DNA of 64,000 nt, taken from IMG/VR virus record IMGVR_UViG_3300021964_000012, positions 186,001 through 250,000 of that record; one strand, 5' to 3'. The position numbers were made by a program, and so were the translations under genes. Below, piece by piece: positions 40,211-52,204 of this stretch. The stretch's first letter is position 1; each line of letters opens with the position of its first letter. The notes under the pieces were generated by a model. The model was not told the origin of the DNA and searched no databases. It saw only the letters and a list, made by a program, of their open reading frames with translations.

Positions 40211-40240
40211 AAGGCATCTTTAGGCAAACATAGGCAAACA
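40211..40240 (+). repeat. Perfect tandem 10-mer TAGGCAAACA x2 (a third AGGCA lies one period upstream) directly before the dnaE-like ATG
   Basis: 40221-40230 and 40231-40240 are identical. AGGCA starts at 40212, 40222 and 40232. Confidence 0.85.
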
Positions 40241-41940
40241 TGAAAACAGAAATAGAACAGATACAATTATTATTAGAACAATTTAGAAGACCAACTCCCG
40301 AAGGCGAAGAATATCAAAACAGACTAGCAGAAGAATTTGAAATTATACTTCAGCAACGTTTTACAGATTACTTTCTCAAAATAAGACTCATACTTGATCT
40401 CAACGAAGACATACCACACATGACCAGAGGCAGTGCTGGTAGCAGTTTGGTTTGCTATCTCATGGGCATAACTGATGTTGATCCAATTGAATGGAACATA
40501 CCACTAGCAAGATTTTTAAATCCATACAGAGATGACTTGCCTGATGTGGATATTGATATACCTCATCACAAACAAGAACTTGCAATGCAACGTGTGTTTG
40601 ACAAATGGCCAACACAGAGTGCTAGGATATCAAACTATGTGCTTTACAGAGAGAAGAGTGCAAAACGCGAAGCTGCCAAACGCCTTGGAGCAAAAGGCAG
40701 ACTGCCAAAAGATATAGACTACGCAAAACTAGGCGTTGACGAACAAGAAGCACGTCGTATTGAACGCAAACTCATGGGCAAAAAACGTTGTATCAGCAAA
40801 CACTGTGGTGGTGTGCTGGTTTTTGATCGTCCACTACCTAAAAGCCTGTTCCGTGATGACAATCTTATCTTGCTTGACAAAAACGAAGTAGAGGATTTGG
40901 AACATCTAAAAGTAGACATACTTGCAAACAGAGGATTATCACAGTTACTAGAAATAGATCCTCACACAAGACTGGATGCATATCCAAAACAGGATGAACG
41001 TGTTGCTGATTTGTTGTGTAGAGGTGATGTACTTGGTGTAACACAAGGTGAGTCGCCAACTATGAAGAGACTGTTTCGTGCATTGCAACCAACCGGAGTT
41101 GAGGACTGTGTGTTTGCCAGTGCATTAGTGCGTCCAGTTGCTATGGAAGGCAGACGCAAGGCCAGTTGGTTCCGTGACTGGAGTGAAAAAGGCATACAAA
41201 AGAATGCAATAGTATATGAAGATGATGCCATACATAAAATAATGAAATTGATTGGCATATCACCATACGAAGCAGATATGTATCGTCGTGCTTTTGCAAA
41301 AAAGAATGAAGAAAAGATGATGCAGTTTATGGCACGCTTAGGTGATCATCCAGACAAGCATGATATCTATGAACAAATGCAATCACTAAGTGGGTTTGGC
41401 TTGTGTAGAGCACACGCAGTTAATTTAGGCAGACTTATATGGGCATTAGCATATCACAAAGTATACAATCCAAAAGAGTTTTGGCGTGCTTGTTTAAAAC
41501 ACTGCCAAGGATCATATGCACGTTGGGTATATCGTAACGAAGCAAAACGTGCTGGTTGGGATCTGCGTGAACTAGGTTTTGACAACTGGATTACAGAAGA
41601 TCCAGTTGAGAGTTTCAAACAACATGGTGCATGGAATAGTCCTGGCTTTTTGCCAAACATGGGATTGCAAAATTTATTCTTAGACAAGTTTCAGTTTGCA
41701 GGTATAATTGCCGCCAGCAGAGTGTTTAAAAGTGATATAAAAAGTTATATACACTTCATCACACTAGGTGTTGGTGAAGGTCGCTATGTGGATCTTGTTG
41801 TTGACAAACCAGTGAAATACGGTAAAGGAACTGTAGTCTTAGGAGAAGGAGAACTACACAGCAGAGACAACAGCGAGTATCTCAAAGTAAAACGCAAATC
41901 AGTAAAAGTGATGTCAATTGACGACTATGTTCAGAGCTAA
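40240..41940 (+). CDS. dnaE: PHP-less, compact DNA polymerase III alpha (DnaE-like)
   Basis: RGSAGSSLV, RFLNP.RDDLPDVDID, KHCGGV, KVDIL, GVTQGES and GFGLCRAHA. All three catalytic Asp are present. No PHP domain; 566 aa. Confidence 0.85.
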   Translation: MKTEIEQIQLLLEQFRRPTPEGEEYQNRLAEEFEIILQQRFTDYFLKIRLILDLNEDIPHMTRGSAGSSLVCYLMGITDVDPIEWNIPLARFLNPYRDDLPDVDIDIPHHKQELAMQRVFDKWPTQSARISNYVLYREKSAKREAAKRLGAKGRLPKDIDYAKLGVDEQEARRIERKLMGKKRCISKHCGGVLVFDRPLPKSLFRDDNLILLDKNEVEDLEHLKVDILANRGLSQLLEIDPHTRLDAYPKQDERVADLLCRGDVLGVTQGESPTMKRLFRALQPTGVEDCVFASALVRPVAMEGRRKASWFRDWSEKGIQKNAIVYEDDAIHKIMKLIGISPYEADMYRRAFAKKNEEKMMQFMARLGDHPDKHDIYEQMQSLSGFGLCRAHAVNLGRLIWALAYHKVYNPKEFWRACLKHCQGSYARWVYRNEAKRAGWDLRELGFDNWITEDPVESFKQHGAWNSPGFLPNMGLQNLFLDKFQFAGIIAASRVFKSDIKSYIHFITLGVGEGRYVDLVVDKPVKYGKGTVVLGEGELHSRDNSEYLKVKRKSVKVMSIDDYVQS

Positions 41941-42944
41941 CAGGTACCACAGTTATCATCGCAAATGACTAACCGTCCATTTTCATAATCTTTAAGTATC
42001 CAACTTTGTTCCACTTTGCCAAACCATTCAATACATTGTTCCAAAGTGTAAACTAATGCATTATTTTTTTCAATCATTGGAATTAATTGACTGTTGGCAG
42101 CTTGATGATACTGCCCTTTCCCGTATGTCTTAGGGTAAAACCCAGTGTAACAACAAGGATACACATCTCCATTGGCAGAGATATAAATGCTTTTAAGTTT
42201 TTTTGTTTCACAGATTACACTGGCGCAAGGTTTTCTTCCTGGAATAATATCTTCTAATAAAATATCATCAGTTTTTTTACTGTCAAGAAGTTTTTCAAAA
42301 TTGGTTTCTCCTGAGTATGATCCTAATGTATGAGCCAGGTTACCTTTCTTGTCAAATACAGGAGCAGTGTTTCTTCCTTCGTCAACTATTTTAAATTTTG
42401 AAAATTCCAGTTGAATGCTCAGTTGTTTACATTCTTCGATTTGATGACGATTATGATCAAATTCTATAAACTGCCAAATTGCATTTCCTCCGTTTGAAAT
42501 AAAAGTTTTAGCATTTTTAATCACAGTTTTCCAAGAAGTATCTTGACGATATAAACTGTGGGTGTCTTCTAATCCATCAATTGCAAAATTAACCGTGGCA
42601 CTACTGCTGGCAAGGCTTTTCCAAAAATCTTCTTTTCTAGCTCCGCCGTTGGTGTTAATCGAAATATTCATTTTTGGATTATTATCTCTAAAGTATTTTA
42701 TAATATCTTGACCTTCGGGATTCATCACAATATCGCCAAAATTTCCATTAACACGAATTGATTTCAATTGTAGCAGAAATTTTTTTGAAAATATTTTTTT
42801 TGTTTGCTCTAATGTCAAATACGTTTCAGGATAACCTCCATTATAAGGATACCCCCAGAAGTTTCGAGGACACCAAGGACATCTCGCATTACACAAAGAT
42901 GCAATTTCTAAATGAACATCACGAATTTCATTGTAAGATATCAT
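41937..42944 (-). CDS. Radical SAM protein with SPASM/twitch-like C-terminus
   Basis: CNARCPWC, GNFGD, NTNGG, DVYPCC and terminal C..NC. Confidence 0.9.
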   Translation of the reverse strand: MISYNEIRDVHLEIASLCNARCPWCPRNFWGYPYNGGYPETYLTLEQTKKIFSKKFLLQLKSIRVNGNFGDIVMNPEGQDIIKYFRDNNPKMNISINTNGGARKEDFWKSLASSSATVNFAIDGLEDTHSLYRQDTSWKTVIKNAKTFISNGGNAIWQFIEFDHNRHQIEECKQLSIQLEFSKFKIVDEGRNTAPVFDKKGNLAHTLGSYSGETNFEKLLDSKKTDDILLEDIIPGRKPCASVICETKKLKSIYISANGDVYPCCYTGFYPKTYGKGQYHQAANSQLIPMIEKNNALVYTLEQCIEWFGKVEQSWILKDYENGRLVICDDNCGTC

Positions 42945-44344
42945 TTTTGTTTGATACCTGCTAACATCTGTTTAAGTTTTGTGCTTTGTACATCAGCAAC
43001 AATCTTACCTGGTTCGTCTGCCACAGTTGCATCGTTTACAGTGTCAGTTGTGAGTGTCTTGGCTTTTATTTGATCATAGATACTTGAACTCTGTTTCTTA
43101 AACTGTTGATATTCTTCATCATCTCCTAAGTCACGTATACGCAAACTTTCTATGTCAAACTCCAAGTCTACTTTCTGTCCAACACCTGAACTACTTCTAG
43201 TCTTCATAGCCTGTATCTGATATCTGCCACGTTCTCTCATTGCACGGCTTGTAAAGATACCAAACACATTGTCAGCAGTATTGATCTTACTGATACCACC
43301 TGATATATGCGAATGATCAAACTCTATTTCTTCAACTGCACTTCTATTCAACTGTGAAGCAGTTACAAACAATATGTTAAGTTCCCTTGCAAGGTTACGC
43401 AGTTCTTCAGATACATACTTGTCCTTAACAAACAGATCATTTGGCGATACTTTTGCACTTACTGGCATAAGCAAATCCAAATAGTCAACACACATAAAGT
43501 CTATTTCTTTTCCTTGTTTGATGCTTAGTTCTTTTACAAATGCTCTTATGTCGTTAACTGTGCTCTGTGCAGGCATGTATTTTATTTGAAGTTTTCCTGA
43601 CTTCTTGCCCATCATTTTAACTTTCATTTCAACAGTTTCAATGTCTTTGAACAACTGTTTACTAGGAGTGTTTGTTAACATACTGTCAATACGCATAGCT
43701 GTCAACCCTTCACTCAATTCGAGTGTAATGTATACTCCGCTGAGTCCTGCTTCCATCCAGTTCACTGCCAAGTTTTGCATGAACAAACTTTTACCTGATC
43801 CTGACCCGCCTGCAAATATCTGTAGTTCTCCTCTGTTAAACCCACCATACAATAATTTGTCTAAGTTTGCCCAACCTGTTGAATTCTGTCCGTTGTTGTC
43901 TTTCAGTGCCGCAAGTCTTGCACGAGGATCTTCAAAGTAATCTGTACCCAGATCCTTTGTTAAACTTATCTGTACTGCATCCTTGATTAGTTTCTCAACT
44001 GGTGAATACTCTCCCTTTTCTAACAGGTCTGCACTTTTAAGTATGGCACGTTCTAGTTCAGTACGTCTGGTAAATGCTTCAAATTCGTTCAAAAACCAAT
44101 CTGTATGTCCACTATTGAGATCTGGAATCTCCAATAGTTCAACGTTTGTCACTGCTTTTATCTGTGCTCTGTCAGGAAGTGTTTTATGTTCGTTTGCATG
44201 GTCATAGATAAACTTTGCAGTTTCACGCAAGTCTCTGTCAAAATTTTCTGTATTGAATATATTTTGTACTCTCAAAAAACTTTGTGCATCATGCATCATC
44301 ATTTCTAAAAATAACTTTTGTACATCATAGTTATAATCTGTCAT
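42941..44344 (-). CDS. DnaB/gp41-like replicative helicase
   Basis: GGSGSGKS, YITLELSE, VDYLDL, TASQLNRS and KTRSS. Confidence 0.92.
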   Translation of the reverse strand: MTDYNYDVQKLFLEMMMHDAQSFLRVQNIFNTENFDRDLRETAKFIYDHANEHKTLPDRAQIKAVTNVELLEIPDLNSGHTDWFLNEFEAFTRRTELERAILKSADLLEKGEYSPVEKLIKDAVQISLTKDLGTDYFEDPRARLAALKDNNGQNSTGWANLDKLLYGGFNRGELQIFAGGSGSGKSLFMQNLAVNWMEAGLSGVYITLELSEGLTAMRIDSMLTNTPSKQLFKDIETVEMKVKMMGKKSGKLQIKYMPAQSTVNDIRAFVKELSIKQGKEIDFMCVDYLDLLMPVSAKVSPNDLFVKDKYVSEELRNLARELNILFVTASQLNRSAVEEIEFDHSHISGGISKINTADNVFGIFTSRAMRERGRYQIQAMKTRSSSGVGQKVDLEFDIESLRIRDLGDDEEYQQFKKQSSSIYDQIKAKTLTTDTVNDATVADEPGKIVADVQSTKLKQMLAGIKQK

Positions 44345-45312
44345 ACTATCCTCGCTAGGCGTTTACGTGCCATTTCAATTTTTATCTTACTACGTTCTGC
44401 ATGTTGATGAATTTGATGTAGTGTTTCGGCTACACCAAAACGCACCACTGCATCATTTACATCTTTTACATCTTTGGGCCATTCGGGTATACTAACTTCA
44501 AACTTGTGTTCTACTGCGGCATCAATTATACTTAATCCTGCACGGTCCTGATCTGGTACTACTATAATTCTACGTTGTAACTGCTTCAACAACTGTGCTT
44601 GATCTTTGCTAATGGTCTCATGCATACATGCTAATCCGGATATACTTAGTGCATCAAATATACCCTCAACAACTATTGCACTAGTCCAGTCAGACTTTTG
44701 TAAATCGTAACCAAACACATACCCAGGTTGTTGATTGTTTATAAACTTTGGTGTACGATTATCCAAGTAACGTGATGTATATCCTACTATCCTGTTTTTG
44801 TAAGTGTATGGTATAACAATCCTGTCTCTTGGTCCACGTTTTTTATCTACTAAAAATGGATAACCAAACACTATACCACGATTACGCAGGTATTCAACAT
44901 AATGAAAGTGACCACGATTGTTCTCATCTATTCGTTCAACACCTGTGGGTATTTCTTGTTCTTCAAAGTCTATTTGTTTTTGTTTAATGGTATTGCGTTC
45001 AGCAGTTAAATCTAATAAATTTTTACGTTTCAAACTTTCTAAGTTGAGCCTTTCAATATCAGTTGGATCAACACCTAGCCATTCTAATAGTTTACGTGTT
45101 TTGTAACCAACGTTGCGTCCAGCAACAAAACTTGCTGTAAAACCACAGTTAAAGCAATGATAACTCCAATCGTCATCCTGTTGTTTGATTCCACCACGAA
45201 GACGCTTGTCTTTTGATTCACCTTGATGAACACAACAAGGTGCATTGAAACTTACCCATCCAGAACTGGTATGTTTTCGCTTTTGCGGAATGTAACTCAA
45301 TAGATCGATCAT
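44341..45312 (-). CDS. gp61-like DNA primase (Zn finger plus TOPRIM)
   Basis: NAPCC..YHCFNCG, VVEGIFDA, PDQDRAG and KDVND. Confidence 0.9.
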   Translation of the reverse strand: MIDLLSYIPQKRKHTSSGWVSFNAPCCVHQGESKDKRLRGGIKQQDDDWSYHCFNCGFTASFVAGRNVGYKTRKLLEWLGVDPTDIERLNLESLKRKNLLDLTAERNTIKQKQIDFEEQEIPTGVERIDENNRGHFHYVEYLRNRGIVFGYPFLVDKKRGPRDRIVIPYTYKNRIVGYTSRYLDNRTPKFINNQQPGYVFGYDLQKSDWTSAIVVEGIFDALSISGLACMHETISKDQAQLLKQLQRRIIVVPDQDRAGLSIIDAAVEHKFEVSIPEWPKDVKDVNDAVVRFGVAETLHQIHQHAERSKIKIEMARKRLARIV

Positions 45313-45356: not shown

Positions 45357-46349
45357 TTATCGATAGGTGATTTGGCTAATAGTACCGTTATTAATTTCCA
45401 CAGTAGGAGTTGCTTCATAGCCTTGCCCACCATTAGTAACAGAAATTTCTGTAACTACATTTCCGCTTATGGTTGCAGTTGCAGTGGCTCCGGTGCCTAG
45501 TCCTGTGATTTCAACATTTGGTGTACCAGGACCATAGTACTCACTACCACCCGTTGCACTAATCTCAGTTATTACGCCGTTCTGTACAGTGGCACTGCCA
45601 GTAGCAGCCACACCATATTGATTGATTTCAAAACGTACCCAGTTGTGTCTTCCCTCAACATTCACAAATGCTCTTTTAGTTTGATTGGTATAGACTGTTT
45701 GACTCCCTATATCATACCAATCTGGACCTATCTGTGTGTCACTGCCTTGTGCTTTTACATTACCTGAGAAGTTGTCAAAGTCAAATTGAAATGTTGTGAG
45801 TGTATTATTCGCAGTATATGCTATGCTAGTATATCTTCTATCACCAGATTCAGTTTTTATTCCATATTCATCTGGTTTAGGAATTTCAAGTAACCTGCTT
45901 TCAACAAAATTAGGATATACACTGTCTACTATTTCAACTTGTCCACGTCCTGAACTATATGCATCTGTAAAGACTGCTTCATAGAGATTGCCACTAGCAC
46001 GTTCTAAACTCCAGCTTGCAGTTTGCTCTTCAATAAGATCCAGTTCTTCACTAGTAAGTGTAACCTTTGCTCTTCCAAATGTTGCACTCAATGTTTCTAA
46101 ATCTTTGGCTATTAACTGTTCTTCTCCGTCTGTAGACATCATTCTATAGGTAATAGTGCTACCACTAATATTCACTGGTTTTTGATCTTGATTTATAAAT
46201 TCAAATAATATGACATTGTCAACACCGCGGTTGACTTTTAATTTCTTAGCATACACTGGTTGCCATCTCCTTTGAAAGTATGCGCCACTCGTATCAGGTA
46301 ATAACACCTGCTGCTTCTGCTGATATAAATATACGGGTGTAGAATACAT
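45357..46349 (-). CDS. Putative virion protein (BppU-N-like domain plus Gly-rich beta repeats)
   Basis: KVNRGVDNVILFEFINQDQKPVNISG, and C-terminal ATATI.G..I.VTNGG.GY...PTV repeats. Late promoter at 46372-46377. Confidence 0.5.
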   Translation of the reverse strand: MYSTPVYLYQQKQQVLLPDTSGAYFQRRWQPVYAKKLKVNRGVDNVILFEFINQDQKPVNISGSTITYRMMSTDGEEQLIAKDLETLSATFGRAKVTLTSEELDLIEEQTASWSLERASGNLYEAVFTDAYSSGRGQVEIVDSVYPNFVESRLLEIPKPDEYGIKTESGDRRYTSIAYTANNTLTTFQFDFDNFSGNVKAQGSDTQIGPDWYDIGSQTVYTNQTKRAFVNVEGRHNWVRFEINQYGVAATGSATVQNGVITEISATGGSEYYGPGTPNVEITGLGTGATATATISGNVVTEISVTNGGQGYEATPTVEINNGTISQITYR

Positions 46350-46375: not shown

Positions 46376-46753
46376 ATGGGCGTAGAGCTGTTCGAAAAGA
46401 TTGCAGGACGATATCCGTTTATCACTTTCTGTACCTATGCAGGTAATGAATATGTTGGTGTAATCCAAAACCGCGATGATCAAATCACTACTATCTATGA
46501 CTTTGGAAGTATCGTCGAAGATGATATCAAACGTGATTTTCTAGAACTAGCCAATCAATGGTGGTGGGAATCTAATCGCAGTATACCAATTAACATTTTT
46601 TTAAAACAAGATTGGGAAAAGTTTAAACCTTATTTAAAAACTTTCATAAACAAAGATCTACAAATTTTACTAGGGCCAAGCACAAGCCTAGCAGAACTTA
46701 GTCGTAAAAAAATAAAACGAAGAAGTATTACACTGGTTCGCAAAGTAGATTAA
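46376..46753 (+). CDS. Hypothetical protein
   Basis: Intact ORF with TATAAATA at 46324-46331. Confidence 0.6.
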   Translation: MGVELFEKIAGRYPFITFCTYAGNEYVGVIQNRDDQITTIYDFGSIVEDDIKRDFLELANQWWWESNRSIPINIFLKQDWEKFKPYLKTFINKDLQILLGPSTSLAELSRKKIKRRSITLVRKVD

Positions 46754-47288
46754 TGTGTAGTGCAACAAGACGTGCATAACTGATTGCATGTGATTTTTTA
46801 AATACAAAACCAGCACTATTATCTCCATCCCACACAGTAGCAAATACATCAGTCCAACTCTTACGTTGTAGGTGAGATTTACCTGGACGTATTATACTGA
46901 TAAATGCTGCCATGCGTTGTATGTTGTCTGGTTGCATTGCAACTATTAGGTCATGATAGTTCCCAATATGCACTATCTGTTCGCAAAAATCTTTGTCTTG
47001 TAAACGTGTCCAGTCTGTTTCTTTTGCCAACATAGCATCATAGTGTGCTTGGTCACGTATCAGTGTGTACACACTTTGATTAAGTAAGTCTAATTTAAAA
47101 TACCCACGTTGTTCTGCATACTCATAGTCTATGCTTGCACAACTGTTTATTGCATCAAATGGTACAGGAGTAACATAAACACCACTATTGTGCTTTTTTC
47201 CTTCTGCGTTCATTCTTGCCGGTGTACATTGAATCAAATCAATTATCTGTTGCCTATCAGCAAAATCTATGTCAACATCAGCACTCAT
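46728..47288 (-). CDS. Miniature DnaE palm-like protein (186 aa)
   Basis: ADVDIDF at the very N-terminus, KHNSGVY, GYFKLDLL and FKKSHAISYA: four DnaE motifs in the correct order. Confidence 0.75.
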   Translation of the reverse strand: MSADVDIDFADRQQIIDLIQCTPARMNAEGKKHNSGVYVTPVPFDAINSCASIDYEYAEQRGYFKLDLLNQSVYTLIRDQAHYDAMLAKETDWTRLQDKDFCEQIVHIGNYHDLIVAMQPDNIQRMAAFISIIRPGKSHLQRKSWTDVFATVWDGDNSAGFVFKKSHAISYARLVALHINLLCEPV

Positions 47289-47536
47289 TTACTAATGTAG
47301 TGTCCTATGTTAGCAAATTCAGCAATCGCAAATACTATTGCAGCCATAACTAAATCACCAGTTAACAATGCATAGCATCCGCCAATTCTTATCGCACTTT
47401 TTATCAGCAACATATAGAATTGTGGATCTTTGGATTTGTTTACTTTTTCCATTTGTTGGATTTTTGGTCTAGTCAATCCCATTTTCTTCTCCTCTGCAGG
47501 TAATGTAAAACTTATTTTTTCTGTGTAAAACGGCAT
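47285..47536 (-). CDS. Small membrane protein
   Basis: Start moved to MPFYTE; two hydrophobic C-terminal segments. Confidence 0.45.
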   Translation of the reverse strand: MPFYTEKISFTLPAEEKKMGLTRPKIQQMEKVNKSKDPQFYMLLIKSAIRIGGCYALLTGDLVMAAIVFAIAEFANIGHYISK

Positions 47537-47537
47537 G

Positions 47538-48239
47538 CTACCATCCTGCCTGTTTAAGTATTTCTTCACAATATGCCTGATCTGCTGGATAGTCACGAAA
47601 CTTCTTTTGCCAAAAGTCTGGATCAATCCAAGGCCATACAATTTTTGTTTGATCAGGATTCATATCTGCTAGATATCGTTGTCCTGACTCACAGTTAAAC
47701 ACCAACCAAGGTGATATGCGTCCAGTACTTATTGCAAACGCAACTGCATTATCATTTCCATAACGCAAAAAGTCCTGTGCAGGATGTCCAGTACGTTCAC
47801 TCCACTTTATACTATATTCAATGCCACGTTCAAGTGCATCTGTTAGTGCTTCCCGTCTAATATATTCATGAAGGTATTCATCATATACTGCTTCTTTGCA
47901 CCAGTGATCTAGTTTTTTGTTTTGTTTGATCACCCATTCAACAAACTTGGGTACATTGATAGCATTTATACCAACACAATGTCTACCAAATTTTACAAAT
48001 GCTTTGTAGTATGGTGATGTTGCAAAATCTGCATAGCTTTTTAGTTTTGCACTGCCCTGTGTCATGGTGTAAAACTTCAAATAACTTTGCAAACCAATTT
48101 GCACACCAACTTCTTTTTCTTCTTGGAATCTGCGTTTTTGTTCACAGAGATGTACTGCTAGTGTGCTTTCTTTTCTAAACTCACGTTCGCAGTACTTGCA
48201 TCGATAGGTTTCACTTTTTGTCTGCGACTCCGCTGTCAC
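47538..48239 (-). CDS. Protein with an N-terminal C2H2/C2HC-type zinc finger
   Basis: YRCKYCEREFRKESTLAVHLC fits Y-x-C-x2-C-x3-F-x5-L-x2-H. Confidence 0.7.
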   Translation of the reverse strand: MTAESQTKSETYRCKYCEREFRKESTLAVHLCEQKRRFQEEKEVGVQIGLQSYLKFYTMTQGSAKLKSYADFATSPYYKAFVKFGRHCVGINAINVPKFVEWVIKQNKKLDHWCKEAVYDEYLHEYIRREALTDALERGIEYSIKWSERTGHPAQDFLRYGNDNAVAFAISTGRISPWLVFNCESGQRYLADMNPDQTKIVWPWIDPDFWQKKFRDYPADQAYCEEILKQAGW

Positions 48240-50150: not shown

Positions 50151-50753
50151 TTATTTTATCTTGTGTCTTTTCATTATTACGCCGTATTCAAAAAAGTCTT
50201 GTCGGACTATTTCAAACCCTTGTGCTAAAAGCCAAATAACATTTGCTCCACATTTTCCTACCCAACAGTCATTCAAGGTATGAGTATCATCAAACACGAC
50301 TACTGCATCGTCAGTAAGATAAGGAAATATAGCAATCATTTGTTTCATGTGTTCTACCTGGCAGGTTTGATTTGCCAATGGTATGCCTAGTTCTTCTCTA
50401 TAGAAACGTCTTTGTTTTATATCACTATCATCTAATATAAGGTCGATATCCCATATATAATCAAAATTGTCTAGATATAGACAACTAATTTTTTTATCTA
50501 ATTTTGGCAATTGATTCACGCACCAATCACTGCCCCATCCAATATGCCATGTTGCTGGTAGATCTGGAAGACGTCTTTTTGGTTCATCAATAATATCTAC
50601 AGTGTGCATTTCAGCACCATGCTTTTGTGCTAATCGTGAAAAGTATTCTGTACTGCCTTCGTGTCTATCACTGCCTATTTCTAAAAACATTGTGTTATTT
50701 GTTTCACCTAAGTACTGTTCCGTATGTTTAAATGCGTCGCCCATTAGTTCCAC
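50151..50753 (-). CDS. Class I SAM-dependent methyltransferase-like protein
   Basis: FLEIGS, TVD, LYLD and VVFDDT. Confidence 0.6.
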   Translation of the reverse strand: MELMGDAFKHTEQYLGETNNTMFLEIGSDRHEGSTEYFSRLAQKHGAEMHTVDIIDEPKRRLPDLPATWHIGWGSDWCVNQLPKLDKKISCLYLDNFDYIWDIDLILDDSDIKQRRFYREELGIPLANQTCQVEHMKQMIAIFPYLTDDAVVVFDDTHTLNDCWVGKCGANVIWLLAQGFEIVRQDFFEYGVIMKRHKIK

Positions 50754-52204
50754 TCCAGTTTTTCTACACTGTACGGATAGTTCGCTTCTCTATAGAATGC
50801 TTTACGTTTGGTTAGATGTCTTTTTGCAAATCTGCAAGTAGATGTTATGTCCCAGATTTGGACGTGGTCTTTGTCTTCCGCTTTACGAATACCCCTGCCA
50901 ATACTTTGTATAACCCGTACAAAACTTTTACCAGGCTCAAGAAGGACAAGATTGAAGATACGTGGCAGATTAATGCCCACGGCCGCGACACCATATGTAG
51001 CAATAATAATTTTACCTGTCGCAGTAGCCACTTCATCGTACTCATCCTGTCTTGCTTTTGCTTTGGTTGCACCACTTACAAATACTGCATCATCGCCCAT
51101 TCTGTTTAGTAACTCTGTGCCAGCACTTATTCTATCAACCAATACCAATGTGTTACCAGTTTTATTTACTTCAATAACCAAGCCTGCAATGGTATCAAGT
51201 CTGCCTTTTTCTTCAAATAGATACTTTAATTCACTCTGATAGTTTGTAAATTCAGCATGATCAATTAACTGTACAACATTTACGTGACAGTTTGCAAGTA
51301 CACCTTTTTCCTGTAGCTCACTTGCAGCAAGTTGATTTATCACTGGCCCTAAACTACAATGCAATGCTTGAAACTCATATGGCTCTTTTGGCACTGTTCC
51401 TGTTAGTCCCCAACGCAATGGTACACGTGCCATTACTCCAGTGAGCAATGTTTTAAGTGCATCTGCTTTAGCCATATGTACTTCATCAACTATCACTGCA
51501 ACTACGTCTTCTAAAAACTCATGTATTGTAATATCAACTGTTTGGTTCTTTGTGTTCTTTAGCAACACATTTAGACTTTGCCATGTGCATATTGTATGCT
51601 TATGCCCAAACTCTTTTCTATCACCATAGAATACGCCAACATCAAGTTGCATGTTTGAATAGTCTGCTTCTGTTTGTGTAACCAAACTTTTATTAGGAAC
51701 TATTACAATACTACGTCCATAGTTTTCTACACGTTCACTTAGACTTGCAGTCATAATTGTTTTACCAGCACCAGTTGCTACTTCTTGTATGCACTGTGGA
51801 TTTTTTAAGAAACTGTTTATGATCTCTACTTGATAATCACGCATCTTAATAGGAGTGCCAGAGGCAGGATGATTCTTCGGCCACATAATGTCACTGTAAG
51901 TATCTTCTGCCACTGGATCAAACTTGAATACTGTTTGGTATTCTCTGTTGTCTTGTATGTCAACATCGTAGTTGAAGTCTTCTAATATAGGAAGTATATC
52001 TGGTAACAAGTTTAAGTATGTGCTACCGCCCATTTGAAAGTATGCAACCTTACCATCCCAACGTCCTAGTCGTACTGCTGGCAAGTATCTTGCATGCGGT
52101 ACATCATACTTGAAAGTGTTCACGAGTTTCTTACGAACATCAAGCTCTAGTCCTGATATCTTAAGATTTACTTCATCATTTATTATTAGTGTTGCCGTTC
52201 TCAT
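50744..52204 (-). CDS. UvsW-like superfamily 2 helicase
   Basis: RDYQ, ATGAGKT, VDEVH, GLTGT, GINLP and QSIGRGIR. Confidence 0.92.
   Translation of the reverse strand: MRTATLIINDEVNLKISGLELDVRKKLVNTFKYDVPHARYLPAVRLGRWDGKVAYFQMGGSTYLNLLPDILPILEDFNYDVDIQDNREYQTVFKFDPVAEDTYSDIMWPKNHPASGTPIKMRDYQVEIINSFLKNPQCIQEVATGAGKTIMTASLSERVENYGRSIVIVPNKSLVTQTEADYSNMQLDVGVFYGDRKEFGHKHTICTWQSLNVLLKNTKNQTVDITIHEFLEDVVAVIVDEVHMAKADALKTLLTGVMARVPLRWGLTGTVPKEPYEFQALHCSLGPVINQLAASELQEKGVLANCHVNVVQLIDHAEFTNYQSELKYLFEEKGRLDTIAGLVIEVNKTGNTLVLVDRISAGTELLNRMGDDAVFVSGATKAKARQDEYDEVATATGKIIIATYGVAAVGINLPRIFNLVLLEPGKSFVRVIQSIGRGIRKAEDKDHVQIWDITSTCRFAKRHLTKRKAFYREANYPYSVEKLEWN

What the first reader, a model, noticed from the sequence alone, without database searches (positions are those of the whole stretch)
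46728..47288. 186-aa miniature or split DnaE retaining the full catalytic triad
Seen: DVDID, KH.SGV, KLDLL and F.KSHA.SY in order within 186 aa, while DnaE is normally over 1000 aa. The protein starts right at DxD, so the upstream RGS segment is missing. It lies in the replication block near primase and helicase, and a second, larger DnaE-like gene is 5 kb away. Inference: half of a split, intein-free minimal C-family polymerase whose RGS half is encoded elsewhere, or a primer-handling NTase. If active it would be among the smallest C-family cores.
Basis: partly seen in the sequence, partly recalled or inferred. Interest (0 to 1): 0.7.

Follow-up and report, generated by a model that had tools for sequence, protein, structure and literature searches.

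The report
C-terminal half of split mini-DnaE
This 186-residue gene of an uncultured 328-kb marine jumbo phage is the metal-binding half of a two-piece, intein-free, thumb-less miniature DnaE-type DNA polymerase whose other half lies 91 kb away, a gene pair already described by comparative genomics in 2021 but never tested at the bench.

Summary
The ORF at window 46728-47288 (-) encodes 186 aa that start three residues before DVDID and carry KHNSGV, KLDLL and FKKSHAISY in DnaE order.

It is a conserved gene, not a fragment or a pseudogene:
- The family holds about 7,600 90%-identity clusters, almost all 180-215 aa.
- D4, D6, D8, K65, D67, R134, P135 and H167 are 98-100% conserved.
- dN/dS is about 0.10.
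- Only C-family polymerases match its profile, and its model aligns to E. coli DnaE 399-779 (Z up to 9.5).

The predicted RGS partner exists. It is a 157-aa ORF ending ...GVGRGSS...EFLR*, 91 kb away in the same genome. Four results tie the two halves together:
- They co-occur.
- The break point is conserved.
- One natural 375-aa fusion exists.
- The complex prediction passes (ipSAE 0.91, best control 0.01).

The 566-aa DnaE 5 kb away is a separate, complete, one-piece enzyme and not the partner.

Iyer et al. 2021 described this split minimal Pol III alpha in group 2.2 jumbo phages, so this is a new member of a known kind. Polymerase activity is still untested.

The parts
46728..47288 (-). C unit of the split minimal DnaE-type polymerase (186 aa). 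It carries the DxDxD strand (D4, D6, D8), KHNSGV, K65-x-D67, R134-P135 and the KSH motif (K165-H167). The thumb is replaced by a 5-residue turn.
   Evidence: PHROG 11778, E 1e-52; conservation; only DnaE chains hit in the PDB; model pLDDT 95.8; top folds are all C-family polymerases; Z 9.5-6.1; aligned to E. coli 399-779; dN/dS about 0.10.
47285..47482 (-). Small upstream ORF (65 aa, hydrophobic C-terminal half). Its stop overlaps the C-unit start codon (ATGA). It is lineage-specific context and is not shown to be part of the enzyme.
   Evidence: Sequence. A 64-65-aa ORF of the same kind is conserved in most close IMG/VR relatives and is absent in PA5oct-like phages.
47538..48239 (-). C2H2-zinc-finger-like protein (233 aa, PHROG 11058). 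It is the conserved upstream neighbour of the C unit across this phage group. Its function is unknown.
44341..45312 (-). DnaG-type primase (Toprim domain), in the same replication block.
   Evidence: The same order is seen in phage Paride.
42941..44344 (-). DnaB-like replicative helicase, in the same replication block.
40240..41940 (+). Separate one-piece 566-aa DnaE without a PHP domain. It has its own RGS, DVDID, KHCGGV, KVDIL and RAHA motifs. It is not the partner of the C unit.
   Evidence: (PF07733 E 3e-41, PF17657 E 1e-16).

Best explanation
The ORF encodes the C-terminal subunit of a two-polypeptide, intein-free, minimal C-family (DnaE-like) nucleotidyltransferase, of the kind typical of the PA5oct / RaK2 / Atu_ph07-type 'group 2.2' jumbo phages.

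This C unit supplies the Mg2+-binding carboxylates (D4 and D6 equal E. coli D401 and D403; D67 equals D555), the K-x-D strand, the RP motif and the KSH motif of the proximal fingers.

The N unit is 157 aa and lies outside the window, at genome 141683-142156 (-), 91 kb away. It supplies the first part of the Pol-beta-like palm, including the GRGS triphosphate-binding loop (R126-G127-S128 equal E. coli R362-G363-S364).

The two chains are inferred to assemble non-covalently. The strand before GRGS (W122-G123) pairs with the DxD strand (I7-F9) and rebuilds one palm sheet. The result is a core of about 343 aa that lacks the PHP, thumb, beta-clamp-binding and OB domains.

Its most likely activity is DNA-templated nucleotide addition, auxiliary to the phage's 907-aa family B replicase. 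This could be short-patch, primer-extension or repair synthesis.

What is shown: homology, fold, conservation, the separate partner gene, co-occurrence, a natural fusion, and a passing complex prediction. What is inferred: physical association, catalysis and the biological role.
For: Identity and fold:
- PHROG 11778 matches at E 1e-52.
- The profile hits only DnaE chains in the PDB.
- The AF2 model has pLDDT 95.8.
- The top 16 Foldseek hits are all C-family polymerases.
- VIA-align gives Z 9.5-6.1 to 14 PolC/DnaE entries over model residues 1-186, equal to E. coli 399-779. The next unrelated fold scores Z 3.4.

Selection:
- The family has 7,624 90%-identity clusters and 344 50%-identity clusters, almost all 180-215 aa.
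- D4, D6, D8, H33, G36, K65, D67, R134, P135 and H167 are 98-100% conserved in 82 representatives.
- Median pairwise dN/dS is 0.10 against 39 relatives. The Asp codons switch between GAT and GAC while the residue stays Asp.

Partner:
- PF07733 finds a 157-aa ORF ending ...GVGRGSS...EFLR* in the same genome. It matches PHROG 11127 at E 1e-39, and its profile aligns to E. coli DnaE 322-392.
- Each half is found in 96 phage records with nearly the same host breakdown.
- In 5 of 5 large IMG/VR relatives that carry the N unit, the C unit is present as a separate ORF 40-102 kb away.
- The N unit stops right after EFL[RK] in 38 of 40 relatives, and within two residues in the other two.
- A natural 375-aa fusion of N and C units exists, P0291.
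- Complex prediction: ipSAE 0.91 against 0.01 for the best of 3 controls. That mark was reached by 58 of 80 solved complexes and 2 of 110 mismatched pairs. The runs agree in at least 96% of contacts, and the partner's pLDDT is at least 91.

Genome context:
- The genome has a family B polymerase in a 907-aa ORF.
- The gene sits in a primase-helicase block whose order is shared with PA5oct-like phages.

Prior description: Iyer et al. 2021.
Against: - No biochemical or genetic data exist for any member, as far as the literature searches show.
- The enzyme lacks a thumb and about 100 residues of fingers, so stable primer-template binding is uncertain.
- The complex score may partly reflect the model's memory of the single-chain DnaE fold, and my own alignments were used, so the calibration holds only roughly.
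- Pfam does not recognise the C unit.
- Foldseek TM-scores are low, 0.34-0.51.
- The fusion was seen in only one 2.4-kb metagenome contig.
- Near-identical contigs in marine metatranscriptome libraries could come from DNA carry-over, so they do not prove transcription.
Confidence: 0.8

Rival explanations
1. The split enzyme is a real heterodimeric nucleotidyltransferase but not a templated DNA polymerase. It could be a terminal or primer-handling transferase, or a maker of a nucleotide signal used in phage-host conflict.
For: The thumb is absent and the fingers are heavily trimmed. The phage already has a PolB, and here it also has a full one-piece DnaE, so a third replicase looks redundant. 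From general knowledge, Pol-beta-fold NTases include many enzymes that are not polymerases.
Against: The retained and nearly invariant elements are the ones DnaE uses on DNA and dNTP: the K-x-D strand, RP, the KSH motif and the GRGS loop. The gene sits in a primase-helicase block. The only structural relatives are C-family polymerases.
Confidence: 0.12
2. The 186-aa protein works with, or regulates, the neighbouring one-piece 566-aa DnaE rather than the distant 157-aa N unit. It might act as an exchangeable or dominant-negative palm module.
For: The two genes are 4.8 kb apart in the same replication region. Both carry the same motif set.
Against: The one-piece DnaE is complete in itself, with RGS, DxDxD and KVD. 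It is missing from 5 of the 8 genomes checked that carry the split pair, including Paride. The N unit tracks the C unit. The natural fusion joins the N unit to the C unit, not to the one-piece enzyme. The complex prediction passes with the N unit. The two lineages are only distantly alike (hhalign probability 27%).
Confidence: 0.04
3. The ORF is a decaying remnant or chance fragment of a DnaE gene with no function of its own.
For: It is one sixth the length of DnaE and lacks the RGS segment. Pfam gives no hit.
Against: There are thousands of homologues of the same length. The catalytic residues are invariant. dN/dS is about 0.10, with synonymous switching at the Asp codons. The model is confident and compact. 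Synteny is conserved from marine phages to PA5oct.
Confidence: 0.01

Closest known systems
Split minimal DNA polymerase III alpha of group 2.2 jumbo phages (Iyer, Anantharaman, Krishnan, Burroughs, Aravind 2021, Viruses 13:63, PMC7824862); PHROG 11778 (C unit) and PHROG 11127 (N unit)
   Same: There are two standalone proteins encoded by distant genes: an N-terminal NTP-binding unit and a C-terminal Mg2+- and template-binding unit. The host genome is a jumbo phage that also encodes a family B polymerase. No PHP or other Pol III domains are present. The relatives include Atu_ph07, PA5oct and RaK2-like phages.
   Different: This copy is from an uncultured marine phage and is only 36-43% identical to cultured members. 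Its genome additionally carries a one-piece 566-aa DnaE. I did not find the following points in the passages of that paper that I read: the exactly conserved break point, a natural fused form, the dN/dS value, and a controlled complex prediction.
Bacterial DnaE / PolC catalytic subunit (Pfam PF07733 plus PF17657; PDB 2hnh, 2hpi, 3f2b)
   Same: It has the Pol-beta-like palm with the same three carboxylates, GRGS loop, K-x-D, RP and KSH motifs in the same order. The structural alignment spans E. coli 322-392 (N unit) and 399-779 (C unit).
   Different: The palm is cut into two polypeptides at E. coli residues 393-398. There is no PHP domain, thumb, beta-clamp-binding, HhH, OB or tau-binding region. 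The fingers are reduced by about 100 residues. The total is 343 aa against 1160.
Cyanobacterial split DnaE joined by a split intein (DnaE-n / DnaE-c)
   Same: A C-family polymerase is encoded by two distant genes.
   Different: From general knowledge, the cyanobacterial halves carry intein halves and are spliced into one full-length chain, and they are split within the fingers. Here no intein sequence can be present, since the N unit ends at EFLR and the C unit starts 3 residues before DxD. The break lies inside the palm, and association would have to be non-covalent.
PhiKZ split family B polymerase DNAP-N + DNAP-C (Basu et al. 2026 preprint, PMC13648687)
   Same: It is a jumbo-phage DNA polymerase made of two separately encoded subunits that form a stable 1:1 complex. 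This is a precedent for the principle.
   Different: The fold is unrelated (family B, RRM palm), and the phage group (chimalliviruses) is different. That system has been demonstrated experimentally, whereas the split DnaE has not.

Membership tests
Split minimal Pol III alpha of group 2.2 jumbo phages (Iyer et al. 2021) | A standalone C-terminal unit of about 190 aa carrying the Mg2+-binding and template-binding subdomain | tested here: met
   186 aa. PHROG 11778 matches at E 1e-52 over profile positions 7-193 of 197. D4, D6, D67, K65 and KSH are conserved.
Split minimal Pol III alpha of group 2.2 jumbo phages (Iyer et al. 2021) | A separate N-terminal NTP-binding unit encoded by a distant gene in the same genome | tested here: met
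   A 157-aa ORF at genome 141683-142156 (-), 91 kb away. PF07733 scores 32.2 bits, above the cut-off, and PHROG 11127 matches at E 1e-39.
Split minimal Pol III alpha of group 2.2 jumbo phages (Iyer et al. 2021) | The host genome is a jumbo phage (over 200 kb) that also encodes a family B DNA polymerase | tested here: met
   The record is 328,292 bp with direct terminal repeats. PF00136 matches a 907-aa ORF.
Split minimal Pol III alpha of group 2.2 jumbo phages (Iyer et al. 2021) | The two units reconstitute one catalytic enzyme | tested here: inconclusive
   The prediction passes: ipSAE 0.91 against a best control of 0.01, with the mark reached by 58 of 80 solved complexes and 2 of 110 mismatched pairs. 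A natural fusion exists. Association and activity need biochemistry.
C-family DNA polymerase catalytic subunit (DnaE/PolC) | A Pol-beta-like palm with three catalytic carboxylates equivalent to E. coli D401, D403 and D555 | tested here: met
   The profile alignment and the structural alignment (Z up to 9.5) place D4, D6 and D67 on these positions.
C-family DNA polymerase catalytic subunit (DnaE/PolC) | The GS (RGS) triphosphate-binding loop lies in the same polypeptide as the carboxylates | tested here: not met
   The C unit starts 3 residues before DxD. The RGS loop lies on the separate 157-aa protein.
C-family DNA polymerase catalytic subunit (DnaE/PolC) | The Pfam PF07733 / PF17657 models match above the gathering score | tested here: not met
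   The 186-aa protein has no Pfam family at E up to 0.01. The N unit does pass PF07733.
C-family DNA polymerase catalytic subunit (DnaE/PolC) | PHP, thumb, beta-clamp-binding and OB domains are present | tested here: not met
   The N and C units together total 343 aa. The model aligns 179-185 of its 186 residues across a 381-residue stretch of E. coli DnaE (399-779). The thumb segment between the DxD strand and KHxxGV is reduced to about 5 residues.
C-family DNA polymerase catalytic subunit (DnaE/PolC) | Template-directed DNA synthesis | not testable with these tools
   This needs a primer-extension assay.
Split-intein DnaE (cyanobacterial type) | Intein N and C halves flank the break point | tested here: not met
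   The N unit ends 0-2 residues after EFL[RK] in 40 of 40 relatives. The C unit has 3 residues before DxD.

The most novel reading that the evidence does not exclude
The 157-aa and 186-aa pair is a truly active, thumb-less, two-chain C-family DNA polymerase of about 343 aa, the smallest known core of this family. It would work next to the DnaG primase and DnaB helicase as a short-patch or primer-extension enzyme that hands over to the family B replicase. In this marine subclade it would have divided labour with an additional one-piece 566-aa DnaE, giving three polymerases in one phage. That would provide an experimental model for the minimal, possibly ancestral, Pol III catalytic module.
Probability: 0.35. 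Interest if true: 0.65.

Novelty: new member of a known kind. Interest (0 to 1): 0.42.

Why it matters
C-family polymerases replicate nearly all bacterial chromosomes and are drug targets. Every member studied so far is a large multidomain chain of about 900-1400 aa.

A natural core of 343 aa in two chains, with no thumb, PHP or clamp-binding parts, would define the minimum that this fold needs for catalysis. It is under strong purifying selection in thousands of marine and enterobacterial jumbo-phage lineages. It would also test the proposal of Iyer et al. that such forms resemble the ancestral enzyme.

Three findings here make that experiment straightforward to design: the exact break point, the natural fused form, and the strongly predicted interface. 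The coexistence of a PolB, a split mini-DnaE and a one-piece DnaE without a PHP domain in one phage raises the question of how three polymerases share the work.

Tried and rejected
- megablast of the region against GenBank phages found no near relative.
- Single-sequence phmmer of the 186-aa protein against the PDB found nothing. Only the profile found DnaE.
- Pfam gave no hit for the C unit.
- hhalign of the C-unit family against the one-piece DnaE was weak (probability 27%, E 7e-4). It shows distant kinship, not recent paralogy.
- An attempt to build one alignment headed by the fused protein P0291, with N and C units as partial rows, failed. MAFFT did not place the N units on the fusion.
- Literature searches found no experimental work on the split DnaE. 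The PA5oct omics paper does not mention a DNA polymerase. The 2026 jumbo-phage review has no passage on it. The 'split polymerase' preprint concerns PhiKZ PolB.
- Marine metatranscriptome contigs cover the gene at 99-100% identity. They cannot distinguish RNA from DNA carry-over, so they are not counted as proof of expression.
- The upstream C2H2 protein gave no functional lead in the ESM Atlas.
- Readings rejected: pseudogene, intein-mediated splicing, and pairing with the 566-aa DnaE.

Full report
**The object.**
The window is bases 186001-250000 of a 328,292-bp IMG/VR virus record with direct terminal repeats, that is, a complete jumbo-phage genome. The ORF at window 46728-47288 on the minus strand gives 186 aa. 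It sits in a minus-strand replication block. Upstream lie a superfamily helicase (50744-52204), several conserved unknowns and a C2H2-like protein (47538-48239). Downstream lie a DnaG-type primase (44341-45312) and a DnaB helicase (42941-44344). The same order (C2H2 protein, 'DNA polymerase', convergent small gene, unknown, primase, DnaB) is annotated in Pseudomonas phage Paride, a PA5oct-like Wroclawvirus.

**It is a real, selected gene.**
- Pfam does not see it, but PHROG 11778 'DNA polymerase' matches end to end at E 1e-52.
- tblastn finds it in 96 GenBank phage records, all jumbo phages. They include PA5oct-like (43% identity), Atu_ph07, Phosso, and RaK2/121Q/GAP32/CBB-like phages.
- The metagenomic protein collection holds 7,624 90%-identity clusters. 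An exhaustive search of 50%-identity representatives finds 344 clusters, almost all 180-215 aa.
- In 82 full-length representatives, D4, D6, D8, H33, G36, K65, D67, R134, P135 and H167 are 98-100% conserved.
- Against 39 close relatives from IMG/VR, the median pairwise dN/dS is 0.10. The four Asp codons flip between GAT and GAC while the residue never changes.
- Near-identical contigs (99-100%) covering 46947-47430 occur in marine metatranscriptome libraries. This is compatible with expression but does not prove it.

**It is a piece of a DnaE palm.**
- A profile of 76 homologues hits only Pol III alpha chains in the PDB (E. coli 5fku at E 6e-6, plus Thermus and Mycobacterium). The matches are colinear to E. 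coli 399-418, 539-641 and 739-769.
- Counting along that alignment, D4/D6/D8 equal D401/D403/D405, K65/D67 equal K553/D555, R134-P135 equal R639-P640, and K165-S166-H167 equal K758-S759-H760.
- The AlphaFold2 model is confident (pLDDT 95.8, pTM 0.89).
- The 16 best Foldseek hits are all C-family polymerases, though with low TM-scores because the targets are six times longer.
- VIA-align gives Z 9.5-6.1 to 14 PolC/DnaE entries, with 174-185 of the 186 residues aligned to E. coli 399-779. The best unrelated fold scores Z 3.4.
- In E. coli the thumb lies between the DxD strand and KHAGGV (domain limits are from general knowledge of Lamers et al. 2006). Here it is reduced to the turn NAEGK, and about 100 residues of fingers between RPG and KSH are also gone.

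**The missing RGS half exists.**
- Searching the whole genome with PF07733 gives two hits. One is the 566-aa gene in the window. The other is a 157-aa ORF at genome 141683-142156 (-), 91 kb from the C unit and outside the window.
- That ORF ends ...WGVGRGSSVASYVLYLLGVHKIDSMYYDLDPGEFLR*.
- It matches PHROG 11127 'DNA polymerase' at E 1e-39. Its profile aligns to E. coli DnaE 322-392, so R126-G127-S128 equal R362-G363-S364.
- The two proteins therefore abut in DnaE coordinates, and the break falls at E. coli residues 393-398, in the loop before the DxD strand.

**The two halves belong together.**
- (a) The N unit is found in 96 GenBank phage records with nearly the same host breakdown as the 96 records with the C unit. 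In every record I could compare, the two genes are 34-182 kb apart.
- (b) In 5 of 5 large IMG/VR relatives found through the N unit, the C unit is present as its own ORF 40-102 kb away.
- (c) In 40 diverse relatives, the N-unit ORF stops right after EFL[RK] in 38 and within two residues in the other two. The break point is therefore old and fixed, and there is no room for intein halves on either side.
- (d) One 50%-identity cluster representative, P0291 (375 aa), is a natural fusion on a single ORF of a metagenome contig. Its residues 79-180 align to the N unit (E 2e-20) and residues 190-372 to the C unit.
- (e) The complex prediction with my own alignments scores ipSAE 0.91, against 0.01 for the best of three controls. 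That mark was reached by 58 of 80 solved complexes and 2 of 110 mismatched pairs. The runs agree in at least 96% of contacts, and the partner's pLDDT is at least 91. The tightest contacts join W122-G123 of the N unit to I7-F9 of the C unit, which is the palm sheet being completed across chains. As the tool warns, this may partly be memory of the single-chain DnaE fold, so it shows the likeness and does not prove binding.

**The nearby 566-aa DnaE is something else.**
- The gene at window 40240-41940 (+) matches PF07733 (E 3e-41) and the finger domain PF17657. It has its own RGS, DVDID, KHCGGV, KVDIL and RAHA motifs. It is a complete one-piece enzyme that lacks only the PHP end.
- Its only close relative among GenBank phages is an uncultured 484-kb phage (38% identity).
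- Among 8 genomes carrying the split pair, it is present in 3 (this genome, G002, G006). It is absent from 5, including Paride.
- It is only distantly similar to the C-unit family (hhalign probability 27%).
- This phage therefore has three polymerase systems: a 907-aa PolB ORF, the split mini-DnaE, and the one-piece DnaE.

**Prior knowledge.**
Iyer et al. [quoted passage not shown] They suggest it may cooperate with the PolB in synthesis of one strand or in repair. I found no experimental study of it. A conceptual precedent is the PhiKZ split PolB, shown in 2026 to be a stable 1:1 complex.

**Verdict.**
The feature is a new, divergent marine member of a family already described in silico. The following may add to the published description, as far as the passages I read show: the exact conserved break point, the natural fusion, the quantified purifying selection, a controlled interface prediction, and the coexistence with a one-piece DnaE lacking the PHP domain. 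Whether the pair binds, polymerises DNA, and what it does in infection remain untested.

Noticed in passing
window 40240-41940 (+): A one-piece 566-aa DnaE lacks the PHP domain but has all catalytic motifs intact. It is found only in a marine subclade (3 of the 8 genomes checked that carry the split pair). Its closest GenBank relative is an uncultured 484-kb phage at 38% identity. With it, this phage has three polymerase systems: PolB, the split mini-DnaE and the one-piece DnaE.
   Followed up: partly
window 47285-47482 (-): A 65-aa ORF has a hydrophobic C-terminal half (…KSAIRIGGCYALLTGDLVMAAIVFAIAEF…). Its stop overlaps the C-unit start codon (ATGA). It is conserved at 64-65 aa in most close IMG/VR relatives and absent in PA5oct-like phages. 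In some relatives a 325-400-aa ORF occupies this position instead.
   Followed up: partly
window 47538-48239 (-): A 233-aa protein with an N-terminal C2H2-like zinc finger (PHROG 11058) is the conserved upstream neighbour of the C unit, from marine phages to PA5oct. It belongs to a virus-only family of unknown function and could be an accessory factor of the polymerase.
   Followed up: partly
window 41937-42944 (-): A radical SAM / SPASM-domain protein (335 aa) is wedged between the DnaB helicase and the one-piece DnaE. This is unusual company for a replication block.
   Followed up: no
window 45357-46349 (-): A 330-aa ORF lies between the primase and the C unit. Its C-terminal 80 residues hit domains shared by virion, baseplate and head-closure PHROGs, although it sits in a replication block.
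   Followed up: no
window 46376-46753 (+): A convergent 125-aa gene (PHROG 11637) overlaps the 3' end of the C unit by 26 nt. The same convergent overlap (17 nt) is annotated in phage Paride.
   Followed up: no
L007:1066-2193 (+): A natural single-ORF fusion of the N and C units (P0291, 375 aa) lies on a 2.4-kb ENA metagenome contig. It is the only fused form among the 150 best of 344 family representatives.
   Followed up: partly
P0368 (protein of 1735 aa): A 1735-aa protein has nine short stretches matching the C unit (best stretch: query residues 11-49). It may be a repetitive or misassembled sequence. I did not examine it.
   Followed up: no
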